This document shows positions 38,238-50,576 of a stretch of 64,000 nt of DNA, piece after piece (the stretch's first letter is position 1; every line of letters starts with the position of its first letter). The notes below the pieces were generated by a model. It did not search any database and was not told where the DNA came from. It worked only from the letters and a program-made list of their open reading frames with translations. Position numbers and translations under genes: made by a program. This DNA comes from Lepidodermella squamata (lineage: Eukaryota > Animalia > Gastrotricha). Location of the stretch: the NCBI GenBank assembly GCA_047495785.1, contig JBLDXI010000054.1:2790001-2854000 (forward strand), given 5' to 3'.

Positions 38238-40406
38238 CTACTCCGCGTTCGACTCGCTTGTTCGACAGCTCGACGTTGATCGGTGCGAGTTCGAACCCGG
38301 TAAGCCAAGGTGCGCGCTGGGCGAGCTCAAATTCATGCTACTGCCGCTGCATCTGTGGTGGAGACACGACCCGGGCGGGGTTGAAAGACGGCCATTACTG
38401 ACGTCTAGATTCGCCTGTTGAAGGGCGAGCAGCACGGCTACTCGGTCCAACTCGTCCTCAATCGACGGCTGGTTGTCGATGACCACCTCGCCCGATCGCT
38501 CGCCGAATAACAACAGCATTTTAACGCGGTAGTCGACGATTTGCGTAATCGGGTTGCCGGCTAGATTGGCGGATCTTACCATCGGCAGCCGGCTCAGCTG
38601 CTTCACATTCGCGATCGAGTCCAGCTGGTTGCAGGACACGTCTAGTACCTCGATTCCGCACTTGCTCAGGCCTTCGAGATTGCTGAGTTGGTTGTAGCTG
38701 ATGTCGAAGGTCTTCACGTTGCCAATGTGGCGGCTGAAGTTCTCCAGCGATCGAATACGGTTGTGGCTGAGATTCAGGTGTTGCAGTTTCACGCAGTGTT
38801 CCAAGTGCTCGATGACTGAGATTTGGTTAAAACTTAGGTCCAGGTATACCAAGTTCGAAAATGCTTGCTGAAATAAGAAAAAACTCATTTAATTTCAATT
38901 TCATTCGATTTTCTTCAAAATTCGAAAGTTGAATTTGACAAAAATTGAGCTAATTTTACAACATTACCCAACACTTTTTATACTGACAGGTAAAAATCAG
39001 GTAAAAATAAAAAAATTCTAAAAAATTTCTAGGAAATTTCCCTTGCCCACTCTGATTCACAATTCAAAATCCTTGCAGCAAAAAAACCTTTGAATGAAAA
39101 GTTTTTCATCTTTCAAAAAAAATTTAATATTCGTATTAAATGTTAGAATACATCCCCAAAAATGAAAATAATTTCTAAATTACATTTTAATTATTTTAAG
39201 ATGGCTTACCAAGCTTTCATCGATTTCTGAAATCGAATTATTGGCAAAATCGATTGATTGTAGTGTTTTATTTGAGCGTTTCGCAAGTTCGCGCGGCAAG
39301 AATGTACTCATCGAAGTCAGCGATTTGTGAACGTGTAAATGCACTAGGCCGTCGAGAATCGAACCGAACCCAGAAATATTGTTCGCATCGCTATTTGTTA
39401 TCTATAATAACGAAATAAATACAATTTTAAGGAGAAGTTTTTAAATAAAAATTATGCGAGCTATATAATATTTTAGCTAGCAATCTTCTCACTTTAACAG
39501 TTCGTTTCAACTCCGCCTTAAAAAAATTTCCACAAATTCGTCATGCTGTAATTATTCTAATACTTACAACTAGAGTTCGAACAGATCGAAACGGCGATAG
39601 GTCGAAGCAGAGCCGATTCGGTACGATGTTGCTGGTCCCCAACGGCTGATCTGAGCCTTCAATTTTCAGAAATTTAACCGCTCCAAAGAACTCGAGAATA
39701 GTCGCCAAAATCACATCAGGACTCGAGCTGTTTTTATTGCCATTTAAAGACGAAGTCGGAAGGGGTGAAACACTTGTGGCCGGCAATTTTAGCCGCTCGC
39801 AAACCGCGTGCAGCTCTAGCGGCGTGATCGTAAATGCCTCTTCTGCCTTCACCATCCGCTCCATCGCATCTGAGCCGAGGCGATTCGCTAAAGTATCACA
39901 GATAGAGTTGATTTCATAGCGTGGAAAATCGAGGAAATCGGCGAGTTGTTTCGGCAAAGCGCCGAGCTTATGTACAACAGTCAGCAAATACACTTCCAGG
40001 TCGTTTTGCCGCTGCTTTATAAACGCCTCGTTCTGAATATACATAGATTTTTTGCTTGGAAAATTGACATTATTCAAATCATAAGACTCCATCAACTGAA
40101 ACAAAAAATCGAAAATTTAGTCATATTTGACGTAATTTTTACCAAAACTCACTTCGTTGTGAAGTTTGAAAAAATCACTGTAACGACGTTTCACTTGCCA
40201 TGTGTACAAATCAACAGAAACTTCAATCGTAAAAAACTGCAAAAATTAAAAATAAATTTTGAGGCGGATCAAATTTTTCGGAAAATTACTATTGCACCAC
40301 TTCTCATCCAATCGTCTGCCACATAGACTTGTTGCCGCTCATAGCCGGTCAAACGAAGGATTTGAGCTGATTTCTGCAGCGAAAAATCCGAGGTATATAG
40401 CGCCAT
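38238..40406 (-). CDS. NISCH: Nischarin-like protein (PX + LRR only)
   Basis: Multi-exon. PX domain (VKRRYSDFFKLH, FPSKK..FIKQRQNDLEVYL), FTITPLELHAVCERLKLP, LKIEGS..LGTSNI, LRRs, LAGNPI..DYRVKML..VIDN..ELDRVAVLLALQ. Confidence 0.85.
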
Positions 40407-40531
40407 AATTCAATTATTATAATAAAATCATCTATAAAAAAGCAATAATTTATTAAAATATTATTTCTGAGGTAAAAATAAATTTGCGAAAAAACCGGCT
40501 TGAATAAGAAAAATGTCAAAGCAGAAATATA

Positions 40532-41724
40532 TCAAACAGAGTGTTCACCGTACTTGGATGGTTGTTGAAAAGTCACAGTTTTAGGAGTCAATTTCTTATT
40601 AGGATCATCAAAAATTTCCAAAAGTCCACTATGCCACAAATTTTCAATTGAATCAGCAACTGCATTAGCTGTCGAGCGTTGATAGCCGCCGCTAGTTACC
40701 ATGCAAATCGGAATGCCAAGCGTTCGAACTGATGAAAATACGATTTCATCACGAAGTGCAACGCCTCGGGGAGAAATTGATAGTCGCCCCAACGGATCAC
40801 CGGCCATTATGTCCGTACCAGCGTTATAGACAACAAAATCCGGCTTTTCTACCTCTAACGCATGTACCAAGCCACACCTCACCAAATCTGTGTATTTTTC
40901 ATCGCGTATACCGGATTCTAGATGAATCGGATATTGAATCGCTCCTAGTTTCAAAAAAATCCACCATAAATTTTGAAATAATTGAATTATTTCACGCACT
41001 TTTTGCCGGGTGATCTCCTGGATAAATATTAGGATTAAATGCGTCTAAAATCACAACACGTCGATCGTCCAGAAAATCACGTTCATGCCCGTTGCCTTGA
41101 TGGGCGTCTAAATCGACGATCAAAACTTTGCGTAACGAGGTATCCATATCGAGTAGAAATTTAATGCCAAGTTGAATATCGGCATACACGCAAAATCCTC
41201 CGCCAGAATCGGACGAACAGTGATGAAAACCGCCGCCAATGTTGATTGCCCAGCCAAATTTGCGCGCTAGATAGCACGCAAGCACTGTTCCACCCGTTTG
41301 AAGTCGCAACGATCGCAGTAATTTTCGTTGCAGTAATTTATTAGGTACGCAAGCGACGCACGGAACTTCGGTTATTCCGGCTAAAACCGAACTCCAAGAT
41401 AGCGATTTTAAATATCGCTCAGTATGAACGGCCAGTAAATCTGATTTGTTCACTTCCTCCGGTTTCACGCAACTGGTTTCGCTCGACAAGATTTTCTTCT
41501 CTAAAAAAATGACAAAAATAGAGATTATTGATTTGATTCTGGAAGTTCCTACCAATCAAAAACTCGACGATTCGACCCCATTTTCCAGTGTCAAATGGAT
41601 GAGCTTTTTCCAAGCCCCAAGCTGTAATATTGTAATTAGGATGGTATACAAAAGGAAGTTGGCCAGATTTCCTATCCAATTCTTTCAATAAATGAGCCGA
41701 ACTTCCGAGCTTGGTCAAATCCAT
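40532..41724 (-). CDS. HDAC11: Histone deacetylase 11
   Basis: GLEKAHPFDTGKWGRI, QTGGT, WAINIGGGFHH, GGGFCVYADI, DLDAHQGNGHERDF, YNAGTD..GDPLG, SGGY. Confidence 0.95.
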
Positions 41725-41778
41725 CTTAAAAATCTAGATAAAAATTAAGAATTTAAGATTTAAATATGAGCTGATAAT

Positions 41779-42447
41779 TCATTTCTTTGAAGATTTGTTG
41801 GAAGGTTTGGAAGACTTAACAACCTGCCAGACTTCACCGTCCTCATCGACCACGGTTTCAACTTTACTGGATTTTGCACCTGAAGCACCTGATGAGCTTT
41901 CTTTAGCTGATATTTCATCATCACTCTCTTCCTCTGAGCTGTGAGGCGAAACCATGTCGACTTCATCTGGATTTCGACTAGAAATCGGCATCTCAAAATA
42001 AGGATTAATAGCCGGCAATTCTTGAGCCATTTCTTTCAATTGCTCCAAATTCTGGCTTTGGTGAATTTTATATACTGAGTAGACTTGTTGAGCTGTAGTC
42101 GGCAAAGATCCGTCGTCAACAATCAAATTAAATTCCAGATTGAGAATATCGGCGAGAAAATCTTCGATTTCGAATTTTTCTAGGTCGGCTGAAAACATGC
42201 GGTTTTAAATAATTTTGCGGTAAAAAGCGGTATATATTACCATTGCAAATCATCCATTCAACAAAAGCAGTTGGGATCCATTCGGCTTTTTCGCGAGACT
42301 GAACACCGCCGGCTCGGTTTTCAACACCCAACTAAACACGGAAATTGAATATACGAATAATAATTTGCATGAAAACTAGCTAACTCGAAGAGCCTTCCAG
42401 TTGGTTAAGATTTTCTGCAGGCATTCGAGCAGAATTTCGTCCGCCAT
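41779..42447 (-). CDS. TSR2: Pre-rRNA-processing protein TSR2
   Basis: Three exons. NWKALRLGVENRAGG..KAEW, IEDFL..LEFNLIVDDGS, and an acidic tail ending DEDGEVWQVV. Confidence 0.88.
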
Positions 42448-42531
42448 TCTCAATAAAACCACCTATTCATGAAAAATGAACGTGCGAAATCACTGTAATG
42501 AAACGACAGATGTTGTTATGAAATAATAACA

Positions 42532-44113
42532 TTAATTCGAGGCAAATTTGAGCACAACTGAAAGTGTTTTCGGTAGTTTGGAGTCTGCGACTGAAATCGA
42601 GGAACCATCGCGAAGTCCAAACTCGTCGAACAGATTTTTCTCAAGATTAGCGTGGGTAGCTTCAATAACCGGGATGTAGAGAGATATGCTGGAACCATCG
42701 GACGAGTTTGAAGTGAGAGATGGCTCTTTCAAATCCCTTAGATCAAAGAAATTTTAAATATGCCTGGTTTCAGATGAAATAACTAACAATTTTTCCTTTA
42801 ACATGGCCAACAGCTTAGCGACAGTTGCTGATGTTTCAACTGTAATCGGAATCGGTTTGTTGCTACAGGCCGGGCAATTTTCTTTCCGCTCAGTAGGAAA
42901 AGCAAAGCCATAAACGCCTTCGATCTGATTGAAATTCATGAAACCTTCAGCGTAGTCGAAAAGCGTAGACCCTTTGTATAGCCCGGTGAGCAGTTTAACA
43001 ACCTCCATGCAACACAAACCCGCAATGACAGCATTTGTCGAAGCAACGGCGGGGATAATTCGTTTAACGACGCCTTGAGTTAGTCGGTAAGTCACGCCTG
43101 AAATGTTGAAACTTTTAGCGCGGTCGAGGGCACGTTCGAAAATCCATTGGAGATGACGAGGATCGTCGCCATCAACGCCGACGTCTGTACCAAAGGGCCA
43201 CTCTTTTTCCCACATGATGATTCGCACGAATTCGACGCAATGTTCCGGCAATCTGGGGCTACTGGCGATTGTGCAAAGGGGATAATTGACTTGAGGAGGG
43301 TACAAGTCCATTGTACATTCAACGCAGGCAGTCATCCCAGGAATAACGACGCGAATGTTTCCTTTTAAACCTTCAGTGCCTCCATCAATAATGGGAATAA
43401 TACTGCCCGGGTCCAATTCACCATTATCATCATATGCCAGAAGGCTGCACTGAAAATTATCAGACGTCAGGAGCTAATTCAGCAGCGTAACTATAACTTA
43501 CAATCATTCCGTTTAACCAACGTCTAGCGCCAATTGAATCTAAACCACACAGGACAATTCTGAATTGGCTGTAAAATTCGGGGCCGAAAGCTTCGATAGC
43601 GGAATGATGGGCGGTGACTTGGCATTGAGGGAAGTGGCGCTGTACAAACGCAGCAGCGACTTGAGCTTTAGATTTTCCAAGGTCATCAGTGCTATAGTAA
43701 TACCTATATTATTCATCAGGTCCTTGCATCGACGATATGCATACCTGAACATAAATTGCCGGTTCAAATTAGATAGATCGATGGTATCCAAATCGATCAC
43801 GCTTATTTGACGCATGCCAAGAATAGCCTGATACAGGCGACAAGTTCAAGATAGCAAAGCAGCAAACAACAAAATAGTTTACTAGATTTTTCAGGAACTC
43901 ACAGCCCAAACCACCAGCGCCAATTACCAAAATCGGAACGTCACGAAGCAAATCGAATGTCTACGCATATATTAGAAAATAAGCATGAAGTTCAATTCAA
44001 ACCATCCCCTGGACTCTCACCTCTGGAGGGCACGAGTAATTAGCATCGTGCAGCGAACTGGGCGCAGTAAGCAATCCATATAGTGGATCACTATGTAATT
44101 CGGCGTCAGTCAT
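42532..44113 (-). CDS. UBA3: NEDD8-activating enzyme E1 catalytic subunit
   Basis: [46 protein letters not shown], catalytic [27 protein letters not shown]-terminal E2-binding domain. Confidence 0.95.
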
Positions 44114-45699
44114 TTCAAAAAATTAAGTTATCTGAAAAGTCAATCCACACTGTGTCATTTCAATATGCCATATGCCCATTAGTTTATTGTATCTGACCCC
44201 TTAACTCTCATCCCAAAAATTTACTACAATCGCAGAAATAAGTAACTATCAAGAGACGAGAAACAAAGAGCAAGGTTTTAGGTTTTACAGAGCATCCAAA
44301 AAGCCCGGAGACTCTTGGAGTGATTGTAGAGACGATTGCGATTGCGATTGCCTATAGCAGATGAGAGCTGCGAAGACAAAAATCAAGAGCCATACAGTTT
44401 ATCAACAAATATTAAAATAATCTGAAAGCCTAGATTTTTCAACGAACTACAATAGACGCAAATTTATGTTGCGTGCGATAAGAATTTGAAATAAACAGAT
44501 AACACCCGGCAAGAGAAAATAACTAAAGAGCATGATACCGCGAGGTGTCAAACGATGCTATCCCTATTTTGTGATTAATCCGCCGGAAAATAAAAAAAAA
44601 CACTTGAAAAATCCCCAACAAATATAAAAAGTATAGTTATTTAGTTATGACATATATTATATAATATAGTCTATATTTATAAAAATCACCATTTAACAGC
44701 AATTTACATGAATTATTATAAATAATTCAAATTTTTGGCGGGCTTCGATTTGCGAGTTTGTAAAAAACCATCGGCACTTTTCAACTCCCTGGAAATCTCC
44801 GATTCTTCTGTCTTGTGTGACCTAGGACCTCGGACGTCTGACTCTATTCTTGATCAATCTTACGATTCGATTTTTGCTCAGAAAAAATCGCTAGACTCGT
44901 TGGGCTTTGGTTTTTACCCTCCCGTTTGTATTGAAAAAATGCAATAAAAAATAATCAAGGATTCTTATTCTGATTGTTTTTATCAATTATCAAGCTTCAA
45001 GCTGGATTATTATAAGCCGGGCCTCTAGCCTCTATTGATCGATTGGTGTGGTTAGTTTGTAATTTGACGGGCTTGGGAACCATATTCTTTCAGCAAAGCC
45101 CAGTGGAGTGGACTTGAATATTGTCGAGCAGCTTAGGCGAATGTCGCTCAACGTCTAACAGCTGTAGGTTGACCCATCCTTCAAAGAGTTACGAGTTACC
45201 TCTAGTTTGAGATATCCTCATTCCTCATAGTTTAATTTTCATCGCCTATATTACCATTTTGCCACACCATTTCGGAACAAATTTAATTCTGAAACCCTCT
45301 TCCTTGGGATTTTTTATTCACGTTGCATATGATAGCTATACTACATAGTATTTCGCCAACAACGAACCGCTGTTGCTTATGATAGTTTTTCCATCCTCCC
45401 TCCTTTTATTGTCCCTTTAGCAACCGCGCATTATACAATGTCTTTTTTGTTGCGAGCAATTGATAATCGATAAATCAGATACTCGAGATATTTATACTCA
45501 TCATTTCGTTTTCTTGTTCCTAGTTTCTCGTAGTTGGATCGCACGGCGTGTGTAACATCAAGTTGCTAGTTACTTTATTTCAGATATTATTCTACGATTG
45601 ATTAAGTATGTAACATTTAATCACATTTATTCGGAATTTAGCGCTCGTTTGTCTACCGTAGGTTTTTTGAACGCCGATTTAATCATTGCTCCCAACAAC

Positions 45700-45963
45700 A
45701 TGGCCGATAAAATCTATTACTCGGAGAAGTACACAGATGCGGAGTATGAGTACCGTCACGTTATCATTCCCAAAGAAATGGTAAAGATGCTGCCTAAGAA
45801 TCACCTGATGACCGAAAGCGAATGGCGCAGTCTCGGTATTCAACAAAGTCAAGGCTGGATCCACTACATGATTCACACACCCGAGCCTCACATCCTCCTC
45901 TTCCGACGACCCCTCCCAGAAGACCAGAAGCGCGCTGCCCAAGCACAAAATGGCCACAAATGA
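45700..45963 (+). CDS. CKS1: Cyclin-dependent kinase regulatory subunit
   Basis: [61 protein letters not shown] at 45700. Confidence 0.97.
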
Positions 45964-46284
45964 GTAACTATTAACTTGCTTTATACCTATGTTGATACCA
46001 AATTAATGGGTATTCTACTTTTGAATTGCCCACGCTCATCGGTTGAGCCTGAAAAGTTTACCTTTTGGAGTAACTTTTGTTCAAACACGATATATGTGAT
46101 TTGTGCTACCTATTTCTGATAGCTGTGGTCTATATGGCTTCGCTTTTACTCTCAAATCATGGATTGTTCTCTTGCCACTGCTAGACCCGAATTTAGTTAC
46201 AAAATGACGTGATAAATAAATGGCTCAAATTAATAGGCAGTCTTCAGTTCATTTTTCCAATTTTATCCTAGGTTTTTTTAATTA

Positions 46285-49200
46285 ATGACCTCGAAAATCT
46301 ACGTTGCCACCGCTGGTGACGATATTAGATTTTGGCAGGAAAATGAGCAGACAGCTTTGGCGAGAATCAGCTCAGTTCCTGGTCCGATTAATTGCATGGA
46401 CTGGAGCGATTCAGGCCTGCAAGTAGTCGCATGTAGTCAAGTTAACAATCCCCTATCAATCGTGAACATATCGCCAGATTTGAAACTCGCACCCTCAGTT
46501 AACACAACTACGCTATCGCAACTACCAGGTCACGCATCCGTCGTAGCCCTCGGACACGATCAAAGCAACGCACACATCGCAGTTGGGTATGAAGAAGGAA
46601 AGATTGCTGTTGTTAACAGCCGTACTTCAGAGGTGATCAAGACTCTCCCGCATCCAGATGGGAAACATTCGATCATGTCGCTGTGTTTCGACACAAGCGA
46701 TACGCGATTAGCCGCTTCGGACGATTCCGGAAATATTCTTGTCCATAACGTGATTCAAGCCATCCACGGCAAACCTCTGCCTCAAGCTGATGGAGCTATT
46801 GTGCAGCAGGTTAAATTCAGTCCCCACAAAAAAGGATTGCTTGCATCTGCGGCTGATAGTGGCTCAGTCACGATGTGGGACGTATTCAAATCGGTTAAAT
46901 TACACACTTTCGCGAAACTTCACTCGATGCCGGTTACTGGCATCACGTTTTCGCCCCTCAACGATATGCTCCTCCTCACCGCTGGTTTGGATAAACAGTT
47001 TTGCTGTTTAGATTTGCGGAAAAATATGTAAGAAATTAATTTTGAATTTTTCAAATAATTTTAATTAATTTGTGCCAATTTTACAGCGTTGTTAAGACCC
47101 TCCACACAGATTCGGCGATCTCATCGATGGATTTTCATCATGAAGGCTGGGCAGTGGGTCTCGGTACTACTCGTGGCCGGCTGCTGATTTACGATCTTCG
47201 CCAGGCTAGTCGGCCGATGAAAGAAATCGCTGCTCATCAAACGTCGGTTAAAACGGTCAAATTTGCATCGAAGGTGAGCTTGAAAAATTGTCCCCATTCC
47301 TATAATGGACTTTAATCATAATTAATTTCAGAGCTGCGTTCTCACATCGGCTCACCTTCAGTCGAAGAACACTGTTTCCTCACCGGTCGCAACATCGAAA
47401 AATAAAAGTGAGTTATTTTTGTAAATATTTTACGGTCATTTCATATCAAATTCCTGTACATGTTTGGACAACTAGTAATATTTATTTTGAGATTAAGCTG
47501 ATGGAGATTTATTTTTTACCTGTAACCAGCGATTACTTATTGATTGTGAAGTTATTACTGAAGTGTTGTACAAATGCATCGAATAATTTCCCTCTAATTT
47601 GAGTCTAATTACGTCAATAATGCGATCGGTCAAATCATATTTACCTACAGAGGGGGGTGGGAGACGATTTGCATATAATATTTAACCATCTGCGAATTTG
47701 ATTTGTGTCTAAGGTATGTATCTCATCCGAAACCGAGCTTCGGTCTCAGAGCGCTAAAGCGAAAGCCGCGCTCTTTAAAACAAAATAAAAAAATGAAGAT
47801 GAGCAGCAATGCCGCGCTTGTACGTTGGTAAATTTGCTGCCCTAACTCAGCCTCTCATTGTGTCACAGGTGCGTTGTCAAGAGATAGACAGGTGCCTTGT
47901 GACGCAATGGCAAATTTTGGCTGTTTTTAATGGAAAATCTGTTCAAATTGCAGGACTGTTTCAGCGTGTTTCGGATTTTCGTGATATTTGATCGATTTTA
48001 ATTCTCGATGTCAAGGTTTCGCAATTCAGAACCTTTTGCGACCGAAAATACTTGGAATTCTAGCCAATCTGAGACCCCTGTTGAATCACGAATCGTTTCC
48101 ATTTTATATAGTTTCATCCGAATAAAAGACGGAATTGCGAAATTCTGATTTGAAATTATAAATTAACTCTCAAGTCTGATGAATTTTTTCGAGAAAATCA
48201 CATTACGCATTTCATTTTTTTTTGTTTCTTACCACACTTTTCTTTGGGAATTTCACCCACCACACCGCTATTTTTCTGATATTTTTATTATCAAATACGC
48301 AAACGCCTGCGCGATAATAGTTGCTCCTCTGTAGTTACGTAATTTATTTTGGCAAATAGACCCTTTTCATTGCGTGATTGAGAAGTAATTTTTCGAGAAT
48401 GATTGCAATTTTTAATATAATTACTTCACATGCATTCATCAAATATGTGCAGCGATTTAGACTTATCGAGGGCGGACTGAAATGAATTCGCCTTAAATTT
48501 TAACCATCTGCGAATTTGATTTGTGTCTAAGGTATGTATCTCATCCGAAACCGAACCTCGGTCTCAGAGCGCTAAAGCGAAAGCCGCGCTCTTTACAACG
48601 AAACAAAACAAAAAGTAATAACAATCAGCATGTTATGCTAGCCATTTTGCATGGGTAGCGCAACCAGCTTACTTCAACCAGTTTACTCAGTGTTGTGGCT
48701 TGCGGCCCAGCCTCTTTGACCTGGGGTTGGCCTGGGGTCTTGTGTATTTTTATTTTCGAACAATAAAATATTCCATGTTGCTAAATTCCCGAAAAAATGT
48801 TCCTCCTTCCGTTGACACGGAAAATGTGCTTTTGTGACGTTATAATCGTATCGAACCGCTTATGGATGAATTTCGTCTCTTAAAATAAAACTGTTCAAAT
48901 AAGAAACCCTTCAAAATGAAAACTTGCACGCCAAATGCCTTTACGTATGAGCAAAATGAGCTTATTTTAAGCATTATTTGTTGATGATAGGAAATATTCT
49001 GAAGGCATTTGAAAAAATTGGGATAATCTCATACTATAAAATAGTTTCTCAGCTGAAGTAGACACTTATGTCAATATTTTCGATCAAATATTCATCTCGA
49101 ATTGGTGTTCCATGTCTTGAGTGGTATGCCTTGAATGGTGCGGAGCAAAATTTGGTAGTGTGAAAATTTAACCATCTGCGAATTTGATTTGTGTCTAAGG

Positions 49201-50576
49201 TATGTATCTCATCCCAAACTGAGCTTCGGTCTCAGAGCGCTAAAGCGAAAGCCGCGCTCTTTAAAACAAAAACAAAACAATAATAAGGAAAATATTTGCT
49301 ACACGCTGATTTACCTGTCACCATTTTGATGGCGTTTCATGCTGTTCACCAGTATATCACGGGAATTTAGCATAACTATCTTGAATTTTTTTCCTAAATT
49401 TTCGAAATATTTATTCGGCCATTTTCATAGACGAATATAATAATAATAACTTTTTTTCTTATTTTCAGACAGCACTTCGACGGCAATTTCTCCGTTATGT
49501 GCCAACGAGAATACGATGCGGTCTACATCAGTCAACTCGACAGTTTCAAACGACTGTCTATCCTCATTTTACATGAAGCCGGACACAGCAATGCGAGCAG
49601 CCGAAATAGAGATGAATCGTGAGTTGGGAAAATTTCTCAAAAATTCCTATGATAATAGCACGATATTTCAGAGAAAACTCGGCTGCTGGAAGCTCAGCGA
49701 ATGTTGAGTCAAACCCCGCTGACAACCTCCTCAGGCATGGACCCTCTCATCGCGGACGCTGAGAACATTTTCAGATCTCAATCAGTCGACATCATACCGA
49801 ATCGACAACGAATGGACGATACTTTTCGCTCGACGACAGCGGAAGTCCGAAATTTGTCACCGATCAGCTCGCGTGGGACAGGTAAGTATACCAATTTCTA
49901 AGGTGGATTTTTTGTAATAACTTACAATTAAGGTGGCATTCTAAGAAGCGAGTTCAACGTCCCGAATGCGGTGAATCGGCCCCTACCCTCGGCGGCTTCG
50001 ACCCCGTTTCACGCCAATGTCACTCGAAACAACGCGATGTCGACTATTTCAAGCCTACCGAGCCGGATCCCAATCGACAGTATTCGACCTGATAGCGCTA
50101 GTTCGTATACTAGTGCGACTTCGCATGTTGCGAACGCCCTTCCAGTCGCGACGGAAGACTCGTGGTCACCCTCACCCGAGCCGCCGTCATTAAGTGTAAC
50201 CCTGAAAGAGAAAGGCTGTGATATTCACACTCAAACGATTGTAGTCGGCGAGTTGCCGCCGTTGACCGATCAAAAGGACGCGTCGTGTCAAACTGAGGCG
50301 GCTTTCGTATCAGGAGCAGTGTCTCTCGACGATTTCACCAACATCCTAGAAGATAAGCTTAGTCCTATCGAAGAGAATGTGAAGCGGCTTCAAGCGCGGT
50401 TAATAGCTGAAACGTTTGATCAAACGGCTGCGTTGCGGCGTATTATGCGCGAAGAATTGTCGCCGAATGTTCAATTGCAAGCGGAAATCGAGCGGTTGCG
50501 AGCTGAGAACGACCAGTTGCGGCGCGCCTTGTCGTCGTACGACGCCAAATTATTTAATACGAGCTTACGTCTTTGA
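46285..50576 (+). CDS. NEDD1: NEDD1 (gamma-TuRC targeting factor; WD40 + C-terminal coiled coil)
   Basis: AGDDIRFW start; WD40 repeats (H..PVTGITFSPLNDMLLLTAGLDK; GTTRGRLLIYDLR); S/T-rich linker; C-terminal LQAEIERLRAENDQLR. Contains a large intron at 47408-49468. Confidence 0.85.
47684..47774 (+). ncRNA. Candidate spliced-leader (SL) RNA gene, copy 1
   Basis: 30-nt putative exon AACCATCTGCGAATTTGATTTGTGTCTAAG, donor GTATGT at 47714, hairpins ACCGA-gct-TCGGT and AGAGCGC..GCGAAAGC..GCGCTCT, and an A-rich 3' flank. Three copies in one intron. Confidence 0.6.
48502..48592 (+). ncRNA. Candidate SL RNA gene, copy 2
   Basis: Identical to copy 1 except for the hairpin loop (gct to acc). The flanks are not alignable with copy 1. 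Confidence 0.6.
49170..49260 (+). ncRNA. Candidate SL RNA gene, copy 3
   Basis: Identical exon, donor and 3' hairpin. Two substitutions, one of which turns a C-G stem pair into U-G and so keeps the pairing. Confidence 0.6.

What the first reader, a model, noticed from the sequence alone, without database searches (positions are those of the whole stretch)
47684..49260. Three candidate spliced-leader RNA genes with a possibly new 30-nt leader, nested in a NEDD1 intron
Seen: three ~91-nt copies (47684, 48502, 49170) lie inside the 2.06-kb intron 47408-49468, the largest intron I rebuilt in a window where most are ~50 nt. The spacers between them do not align. Conservation starts sharply at TTT|AACC and ends at GCGCTCT followed by TTTA(A/C)AAC-A-rich sequence. 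Each copy has an invariant AACCATCTGCGAATTTGATTTGTGTCTAAG followed by a near-perfect 5' splice site (AAG|GTATGT), then two hairpins, the second capped by GC-GAAA-GC. Three of the four substitutions among copies are in a loop or keep pairing (C-G to U-G). Established: SL RNAs are ~50-150-nt snRNA-like transcripts with a 16-50-nt exon, a GU donor and 3' stem-loops. Inference: this is the SL donor of this animal. The leader ends in AAG, not the AUG of flatworm SLs. No canonical RAU4-6GR Sm site lies in the intron part; Sm-like AATTTGA and ATTTGTG lie in the exon instead, an arrangement known from dinoflagellate SL RNA. I do not recognise this leader sequence.
Basis: partly seen in the sequence, partly recalled or inferred. 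Interest (0 to 1): 0.92.

Follow-up and report, generated by a model that had tools for sequence, protein, structure and literature searches.

The report
Spliced-leader RNA genes inside NEDD1 intron
Three small genes inside one enlarged intron belong to a family of at least 44 copies that very probably supplies the 30-base leader this unidentified small animal splices onto its messenger RNAs; the mechanism is well known, but this leader sequence was not found in the literature searched.

Summary
Three 91-nt units (98-100% alike, unalignable spacers) lie in the 2,061-nt NEDD1 intron.

They belong to a family of at least 44 copies, clustered on many contigs:
- The leader and the GTATGTATC donor are invariant, apart from a 3-5-nt variable patch in the leader.
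- The middle part is free to vary.
- The 3' hairpin covaries and keeps a GNRA loop.
- An upstream element sits where U1/U2/U5 genes have theirs.

One public RNA run supports expression:
- The template-switch oligo abuts the first A of the leader.
- Summed depth over the unit is about 111,000, against 0-244 nearby.
- A few contigs leave the gene at or just after the donor.

Elsewhere in the genome the leader is fused at AAG| to several unrelated retroelement-like sequences.

A related species has a roughly 55-75-nt intron here with no such genes, so the cluster is a recent insertion.

I conclude these are spliced-leader RNA genes (confidence 0.87). A leader-mRNA junction was not shown for a named gene.

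No Sm site exists in the intron part. There is no Rfam match, and no paper searched holds the leader.

This scan had already noted the same family on other contigs of this genome. It is a new member of a known kind.

The parts
47684..47774 (+). SL RNA gene copy 1. Leader exon 47684-47713, donor GTATGT 47714-47719, middle hairpin 47729-47747, 3' hairpin with GAAA loop 47748-47774.
   Evidence: In one search the template-switch oligo tail abuts 47684, summed RNA depth in bin 47600-47799 is 111,327, and contigs leave the gene after 47714 and 47719.
48502..48592 (+). SL RNA gene copy 2. Leader 48502-48531, 3' hairpin 48566-48592. It has two loop substitutions relative to copy 1.
   Evidence: With about 87 nt of upstream flank it is homologous to the copy at C11:1324554.
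49170..49260 (+). SL RNA gene copy 3. Leader 49170-49199, 3' hairpin 49234-49260.
   Evidence: About 280 nt of upstream flank aligns at 74% with the copy at C11:1325034, while the gene itself is 98% identical.
47646..47660 (+). Promoter element of copy 1, like the proximal sequence element (PSE) of snRNA genes, at -38 to -24 (TACAGAGGGGGGTGG). The equivalent elements are at 48464-48478 for copy 2 and 49132-49146 for copy 3.
   Evidence: The family consensus TTTAGGGGGCGGTTC lies at -38..-24. A weight matrix built from the SL copies finds its best hit at -34..-39 in 15 of 19 U1/U2/U5 upstream regions.
47775..47795 (+). TT followed by an A-rich tract (AAAACAAAATAAAAAAA). This is a candidate 3'-end-formation box. 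Similar tracts follow copies 2 and 3.
   Evidence: Similar A-rich AAAAACAAA-type tracts follow the U1/U2/U5 genes. 27 of 42 SL copies have such a tract. Its function is inferred only.
47408..49468 (+). Host intron of the NEDD1-like WD40 gene, 2,061 nt, same strand as the SL genes.
   Evidence: The splice 47407|49469 is seen in RNA contigs and the frame is kept. The orthologous intron in a related species (L038) is about 55-75 nt and holds no SL gene.

Best explanation
The three units are spliced-leader (SL) RNA genes.

Each is an independent small transcription unit. It is probably driven by a proximal element at -38 to -24 of the type used by snRNA genes. Transcription starts at the first A of AACCATC.

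The roughly 91-95-nt RNA carries four parts: a 30-nt leader, a consensus 5' splice site (AAG|GUAUGU) that can pair with the 5' ACC, a variable middle part, and a conserved 3' hairpin with a GNRA tetraloop.

The spliceosome uses the donor in trans. It joins the capped leader to AG acceptors upstream of coding regions, including downstream genes of the tightly packed same-strand gene runs.

The cluster reached the NEDD1 intron by DNA-level duplication of a multi-gene unit shared with contig C11. This happened after the split from a related species.

Shown here: the gene family anatomy, the covariation, the shared promoter element, the RNA 5' end, the very high abundance and the lineage-specific insertion.

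Inferred: Pol II/SNAPc-type transcription, trans-splicing onto mRNAs, and how the snRNP assembles without an intronic Sm site.
For: Family anatomy:
- At least 44 copies genome-wide, in arrays with spacing of about 600-700 bp (for example on C17), all matching positions 1-91.
- Across 36 distinct copies, the leader outside a 3-5-nt variable patch and GTATGTA are invariant, and the next TC is at least 90% conserved, while the middle 25-30 nt is free.
- The 3' hairpin forms standard pairs in 99.1% of cells. Four pairs show changes on both sides. Only 0-2 of 500 shuffles reach the observed values, and the loop stays GNRA (GAAA/GUAA/GCAA).

Promoter:
- The SL upstream consensus lies at -38..-24. 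Its weight matrix hits the same position in 15 of 19 U1/U2/U5 genes.

RNA run X1, shown to be RNA by nine 51-59-nt GT..AG joints:
- The oligo tail GTATCAACGCAGAGTACATGGGG lies directly before 47684. It is the SMART template-switch oligo.
- Summed depth is 111,327 over the unit, against 1.4-4.4 in the flanking intron and about 27 in NEDD1 exons.
- Two contigs leave the gene after 47714 and three after 47719, into mutually unlike sequence.

Leader fusions elsewhere in the genome:
- The leader is fused at AAG| to at least four unrelated sequences that lack the SL promoter. One has a LINE ORF1 with a zinc knuckle.

Conservation and selection:
- An identical leader lies next to a 5S gene in a related species whose rDNA is only 86-89% identical.
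- Gene bodies are 93-98% identical where the homologous spacers are 74-80%.
Against: No leader-mRNA junction was displayed for any named gene.
- The 5' ends of UBA3 and NEDD1 are not covered in X1.
- CKS seems to have an ordinary 5' exon.
- The TSR2 contig merely stops 2 nt past a candidate acceptor AG.

Only five contigs are shown leaving the gene at or near the donor. Three of them do so 6 nt into the intron rather than at the junction.

No RAU4-7GR Sm motif lies in the intron part. It is found with at most one mismatch in only 4 of 36 copies, in the variable region. The usual 'two hairpins around an Sm site' layout is therefore not met.

RNA contigs cannot be assigned to these three copies rather than to paralogues.

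The leader-retroelement fusions could also arise from elements inserted into SL genes and co-transcribed with them.
Confidence: 0.87

Rival explanations
1. The family does encode the SL RNA, but the three copies in the NEDD1 intron are silent or decaying paralogues. The working genes would be those in the rDNA units and the large C17/C19 arrays.
For: RNA contigs cannot be assigned to individual copies. Copy 1 has the most divergent upstream element, GGGGGGTGGGAGACG. The cluster is young and absent from a relative.
Against: The three bodies are 98-100% identical while their spacers do not align. All four substitutions lie in the free middle part. 1,293 of 1,465 RNA contigs laid were at least 99% like copy 1. 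Almost all lay wholly on the stretch, so they must extend beyond the 30-nt leader. Copies 2 and 3 have good upstream elements.
Confidence: 0.15
2. It is an abundant lineage-specific small nuclear or nucleolar RNA that only looks like an SL RNA. The GUAUGU would be a structural or binding element, not a used donor.
For: There is no Sm site in the intron part and no named mRNA junction was seen. Most RNA contigs lie wholly within the unit, so the full-length RNA is itself abundant.
Against: The strongest conservation is the leader plus a perfect 5' splice site. Contigs leave the gene at or near the donor. Leader-only fusions at AAG| occur in the genome. There are no C/D or H/ACA boxes and no Rfam hit. 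The genome has operon-like gene runs with lone acceptors.
Confidence: 0.06
3. It is a mobile element, either a SINE or a promoter module carried by LINEs, and it spread into the intron by retroposition.
For: The copies are dispersed on more than 10 contigs. The cluster is inserted in an intron that is short in a relative. Leader pieces sit at the 5' ends of LINE-like elements. Two SL genes carry insertions at or near the donor.
Against: There is no poly(A) tail, no target-site duplication and no 5' truncation series of the unit itself. Copies carry their external upstream promoter element. Homology with the C11 pair extends about 280 nt upstream, which indicates DNA-level duplication. Arrays are tandem with regular spacing, and the 3' hairpin covaries.
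Confidence: 0.04

Closest known systems
Metazoan spliced-leader RNAs in general: flatworm, nematode SL1/SL2, Hydra, Ciona/Oikopleura, chaetognath, bdelloid rotifer
   Same: It is a short capped leader followed by G|GUA. It is a small multi-copy gene that is often clustered and linked to 5S/rDNA. It has an snRNA-like promoter and a 3' stem-loop. Like most non-flatworm SLs the leader ends in AAG, and like flatworm and euglenozoan SLs it starts with AAC (PMC3795323).
   Different: The 30-nt sequence matches none in the review's consensus table (Table 1) as far as displayed it, nor in any paper searched. The bdelloid leader GGCTTATTACAACTTACCAAGAG is absent from this genome. No Sm motif lies between the hairpins. 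No Rfam SL family matches.
Dinoflagellate and perkinsid SL RNAs, the exceptions in which the Sm motif lies in the exon
   Same: The only invariant U-rich Sm-like string (GAUUUGUGU) lies inside the leader. None lies in the intron part (PMC3795323 and PMC12582326 describe these exceptions).
   Different: The organism here is an animal and the leader is unrelated in sequence. The exonic string has two mismatches to RAU4-7GR. It also lacks the UGG ending of this genome's own U2 and U5 Sm sites. Sm binding is untested.
Leader-bearing LINE/LTR loci and retro-copied trans-spliced transcripts, as in parasitic flatworms and dinoflagellates
   Same: Genomic copies carry only the leader, fused to retroelement sequence. 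[quoted passage not shown]
   Different: Some elements here also sit inside SL genes at or near the donor (C11:1409741, C17:1138774). Insertion followed by read-through is therefore an open alternative.

Membership tests
Spliced-leader RNA (functional class) | The leader exon forms the 5' end of a small RNA, with transcription starting at its first base | tested here: met
   The template-switch oligo tail lies directly before 47684 in RNA contigs. Family conservation also starts there.
Spliced-leader RNA (functional class) | A canonical 5' splice donor lies immediately after the leader (G|GUA) | tested here: met
   AAG|GTATGTA is invariant in all 36 distinct copies, and the following TC is at least 90% conserved.
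Spliced-leader RNA (functional class) | Multi-copy gene family, often tandem or linked to 5S/rDNA, with the exon more conserved than the intron part | tested here: met
   At least 44 copies in arrays. 5S linkage is seen in a related species. The middle part is free to vary.
Spliced-leader RNA (functional class) | Intronic Sm-binding motif (RAU4-7GR) flanked by two hairpins | tested here: not met
   No conserved motif lies in the intron part. The 3' hairpin is conserved, the middle one is not. The literature treats this feature as typical with known exceptions (PMC12582326).
Spliced-leader RNA (functional class) | The leader is found on the 5' ends of many different mRNAs, joined at AG acceptors | tested here: inconclusive
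   Leader RNA depth is huge and five contigs leave the gene at or near the donor. The leader is fused at AAG| to at least four unrelated genomic sequences. No named mRNA junction was displayed.
Spliced-leader RNA (functional class) | snRNA-type promoter | tested here: met
   A shared element lies at about -38..-24 in SL, U1, U2 and U5 genes. The SL genes lack the ATATGCAAAT octamer that the snRNA genes have near -70.
Spliced-leader RNA (functional class) | Trimethylguanosine cap and Sm snRNP | not testable with these tools
   This needs anti-TMG or anti-Sm pull-down.
Rfam SL families and other curated RNA families | Covariance-model match | tested here: not met
   No SL, snRNA, snoRNA or ribozyme family reaches E<=10 on the units.
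SINE / retroposon | A-tail, target-site duplications, internal promoter, many decayed copies | tested here: not met
   The units have an external upstream element, no A-tail or duplications, and duplication at the DNA level.

The most novel reading that the evidence does not exclude
This may be the first spliced-leader system of its animal lineage. The host could not be identified: its best named protein matches are only 50-58% identical. It does not use the bdelloid rotifer leader. Its SL RNA may assemble without any intronic Sm site, either through the invariant exonic GAUUUGUGU (a layout so far tied to dinoflagellates and perkinsids) or without Sm proteins.
Probability: 0.3. Interest if true: 0.65.

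Novelty: new member of a known kind. Interest (0 to 1): 0.45.

Why it matters
Knowing the leader and its genes makes several things possible in this compact genome. Gene 5' ends can be annotated correctly. The many operon-like gene runs, such as UBA3>TSR2>HDAC11>NISCH next door, can be tested. SL-primed cDNA libraries can be made.

It would add one more lineage to the patchy distribution of trans-splicing in animals.

The absence of an intronic Sm site and the leader-capped retroelements are the parts a specialist might pursue. The mechanism itself is well known, and this particular locus is only one young cluster of a large family.

Tried and rejected
Rfam at E<=10, on 5 kb and on 131 nt: only chance snoRNA/miRNA-level hits.

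Literature search for six leader substrings, DNA and RNA spelling and the reverse complement: only chance primer hits. 'Spliced leader' together with 'gastrotrich' returned nothing relevant.

Looking up the window's CKS protein in public assemblies to obtain transcript contigs: not on record.

Searching the genome for the two consensus tails of the RNA contigs that leave the gene (up to 3 mismatches): no match. These are probably mixed consensus strings, with agreement of 0.63-0.73.

A metagenome scan for the leader without its intron, hoping for trans-spliced metatranscripts: it returned only one SL gene next to a 5S gene.

Organism identification:
- No COX1 in the assembly.
- CKS, HDAC11 and TTLL9 searches gave no close named relative.
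- The 'rotifer' guess in earlier notes could not be confirmed.

Middle hairpin as a conserved structure: rejected family-wide.

Intronic Sm site: none found.

Full report
**Observation.** The three units are real and lie exactly where stated: 47684-47774, 48502-48592 and 49170-49260 on the + strand.
- The 36-mer of leader plus donor occurs three times, against none in 100 shuffles.
- Alignment stops about 7 nt before and about 19 nt after each unit; the spacers are unrelated.
- All four substitutions among the copies lie in the middle hairpin. Two are in the loop, one is C-G to U-G, and one breaks an outer pair.

**Host gene.**
- ORFs at 46285-47031 and downstream carry WD40 repeats.
- They are 56-64% identical to a syntenic gene of a related species.
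- In RNA run X1 a contig ending at 47407 continues with the sequence found at 49469, so the 2,061-nt intron is spliced out.
- The frame stays open across the join.
- Nine other introns on the 6-kb stretch are 51-59 nt.

**Family.**
- The window's genome (121 Mb, 151 contigs) holds at least 44 copies. All match positions 1-91.
- They form arrays on C17 (two arrays, spacing about 600-700 bp), C19, C11, C16, C9 and C3, plus single copies.
- In the alignment of 36 distinct copies, AACCATCTGCGAA, a 3-5-nt variable patch, and ATTTGTGTCTAAG|GTATGTATC are essentially invariant (GTATGTA in every copy, the final TC in at least 90%).
- The next 25-30 nt are free.
- The 3' part CAGrGCGC-nnnn-GC-GNRA-GC-y-GyGCyCTTT is conserved.

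**3' hairpin.**
- It forms standard pairs in 99.1% of cells.
- Four of its seven outer pairs show changes on both sides.
- Only 0-2 of 500 shuffles reach the observed values.
- Slid controls fall to 21-67% paired.
- The loop stays GNRA (GAAA, GUAA or GCAA).

**Other structure.**
- The middle hairpin is not a conserved structure family-wide.
- A predicted pairing of the 5' ACC with G|GU across the donor is invariant, so it is untested.

**Promoter and 3' flank.**
- Upstream of the SL copies a weak consensus, TTTAGGGGGCGGTTC, lies at -38..-24. TTT directly precedes the start.
- A weight matrix built from it finds its best hit at -34..-39 in 15 of 19 U1, U2 and U5 upstream regions of the same genome. 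By position this is far more than chance, although the scores themselves are modest.
- The snRNA genes also have an ATATGCAAAT octamer near -70. The SL genes lack it.
- Both kinds of gene are followed by A-rich AAAAACAAA-like tracts.
- U1 genes are interleaved with the C17 SL array. A U2 gene lies 344 nt from the C24 copy.

**RNA evidence.** Only two public runs hold the region. X1 is RNA, since it skips introns with GT..AG in the sense of each gene. X2 is DNA. In X1:
- The bin 47600-47799 has summed contig depth 111,327. The flanking intron has 1.4-4.4, NEDD1 exons about 27, and the best neighbour (CKS) 244.
- 1,465 contigs were laid. Almost all lie on this bin and wholly on the stretch. A contig of at least 31 letters must reach beyond the 30-nt leader, so the unspliced small RNA is itself abundant.
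- Directly before 47684 the contigs carry GTATCAACGCAGAGTACATGGGG. This is the SMART template-switch oligo, so the RNA 5' end is the first A of the leader.
- Two contigs leave the gene after 47714 and three after 47719, into sequences that disagree with each other.

These are contigs, not reads. They cannot be assigned to a copy and show only a handful of divergence events.

**No leader junction for the neighbouring genes.**
- The first exon of UBA3 has no coverage.
- The NEDD1 contig starts 30 nt inside the coding region.
- The CKS contig begins at 45578 and has an ordinary 56-nt 5' intron.
- The TSR2 contig ends at 42464. That is 2 nt past a candidate acceptor (tgaatAG|GTGG, minus strand), as expected if it ran on into ...CTAAG. 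The tail was not displayed, so this is only compatible with trans-splicing.

In the DNA run the unit has about 38 times the flanking depth, in line with the copy number.

**Genomic fusions of the leader.** The full or 5'-shortened leader (0-5 nt missing) is fused at AAG| to unrelated sequences that lack the SL upstream element:
- C4:652814 and two C25 sites. These are a LINE with a zinc-knuckle ORF1, followed by what looks like the start of a second, endonuclease-type ORF.
- C46 and C2, which share one element.
- C7:4113110.
- C56:313939.

Retro-copies of trans-spliced RNAs leave exactly this trace, and flatworm genomes hold hundreds of such loci (PMC12582326). Two SL genes also carry insertions at or near the donor (C11:1409741, C17:1138774). 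Earlier notes of this scan read some LINEs as targeting the SL gene. Read-through from an SL promoter is therefore an alternative source of these fusions. I count this evidence as supportive but not decisive.

**Origin of this cluster.**
- Metagenome contigs of a related species (CKS 95% identical) keep the gene order NISCH-like, HDAC11, TSR2, UBA3 / CKS, NEDD1.
- At the orthologous position of NEDD1 that species has an intron of about 55-75 nt with no SL gene.
- Copies 2 and 3 with their upstream flanks are homologous to the pair at C11:1324554 and C11:1325034. The spacers are 74-80% identical and the genes 93-98%.
- The cluster therefore arrived by DNA-level duplication, and the genes have been kept or homogenised since.
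- Another related species, with rDNA 86-89% identical, has the identical leader in an SL gene about 150 nt upstream of a 5S gene.

**Comparison with what is known.** The anatomy fits the functional class of SL RNAs: the leader, G|GUA, the multi-copy and 5S-linked arrangement, and the snRNA-like promoter (PMC3795323, PMC12582326, PMC12460157). Several things set it apart:
- It is no member of a curated RNA family.
- The leader is in no paper of the searchable library.
- The bdelloid rotifer leader is absent from the genome.
- The typical intronic Sm site between two hairpins is missing.
- The only invariant U-rich string is GAUUUGUGU in the leader. It has two mismatches to RAU4-7GR and lacks the UGG ending of this genome's U2 and U5 Sm sites.

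**Organism.** The animal could not be named. The best named protein matches are 50-58% identical and come from spiralians and deuterostomes. A 2007 EST study found no leader in the monogonont rotifer Brachionus (PMC1925144), so the host lineage matters for novelty.

**Verdict.** These are spliced-leader RNA genes, with confidence 0.87. The finding is a new member of a known kind. Earlier notes of this scan had already described the same family on other contigs (rDNA units, POLA1 introns, an eight-gene array), so this locus adds a young intronic cluster. 

Noticed in passing
window 38238-44113 (minus strand): UBA3 > TSR2 > HDAC11 > LRR (NISCH-like) form a same-strand run. Only about 35-65 nt lie between the UBA3 stop and the candidate TSR2 acceptors. 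One RNA contig spans the UBA3 3' end into TSR2 exon 1. The TSR2 contig stops at 42464, 2 nt past a candidate acceptor AG.
   Followed up: partly
window 45584-45963 (+): A CKS1-type gene (87 aa, single coding exon 45700-45960) has a 22-nt 5' mini-exon and a 56-nt 5'-UTR intron (45606-45661). The RNA contig starts at 45578, so it looks like an ordinary 5' end rather than a trans-spliced one.
   Followed up: partly
L038:6525-9569 versus window 44114-45580: The related species has an uninterrupted 1,014-aa GH38 alpha-mannosidase ORF between UBA3 and CKS. The window has only about 1.4 kb of non-coding DNA there. That DNA has almost no RNA coverage and several 'opposite strands' contig joints, which suggest inverted repeats.
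   Followed up: no
G000:C4:652784-652814 (L066); C25:90099 and C25:101046 (L073, L074): LINE copies (ORF1 with a CCHC knuckle, then an apparent endonuclease-type ORF2 start) begin with the full or nearly full SL leader fused at AAG|. The fusion point in the LINE differs by 8 nt between the C4 and C25 copies.
   Followed up: partly
G000:C17:1138499-1138774 and C11:1409741-1409771: Two SL genes with intact upstream elements are interrupted right at or 2 nt after the donor by foreign sequence. In C17 the insertion is about 210 nt and the 3' hairpin follows it.
   Followed up: no
G000:C17:1741941-1757779; C24:3726820-3727398: U1 snRNA genes are interleaved with an SL array. A U2 gene sits 344 nt from an SL copy in divergent orientation. 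The genome has at least 42 U1, 47 U2 and 48 U5 genes.
   Followed up: no
L065:724-814 (minus strand), JACCDR010895355.1: A related species carries an SL gene with the identical leader about 150 nt upstream of a 5S rRNA gene, within an rDNA-like unit 86-89% identical to this genome's 8.46-kb rDNA repeat.
   Followed up: partly
window 42290-47234: RNA run X1 differs from the assembly at 27 listed positions in UBA3, TSR2, CKS and NEDD1 exons, while DNA run X2 shares only the nine in 43300-43426. X1 is therefore from another strain or population. No difference was listed inside the SL unit.
   Followed up: no
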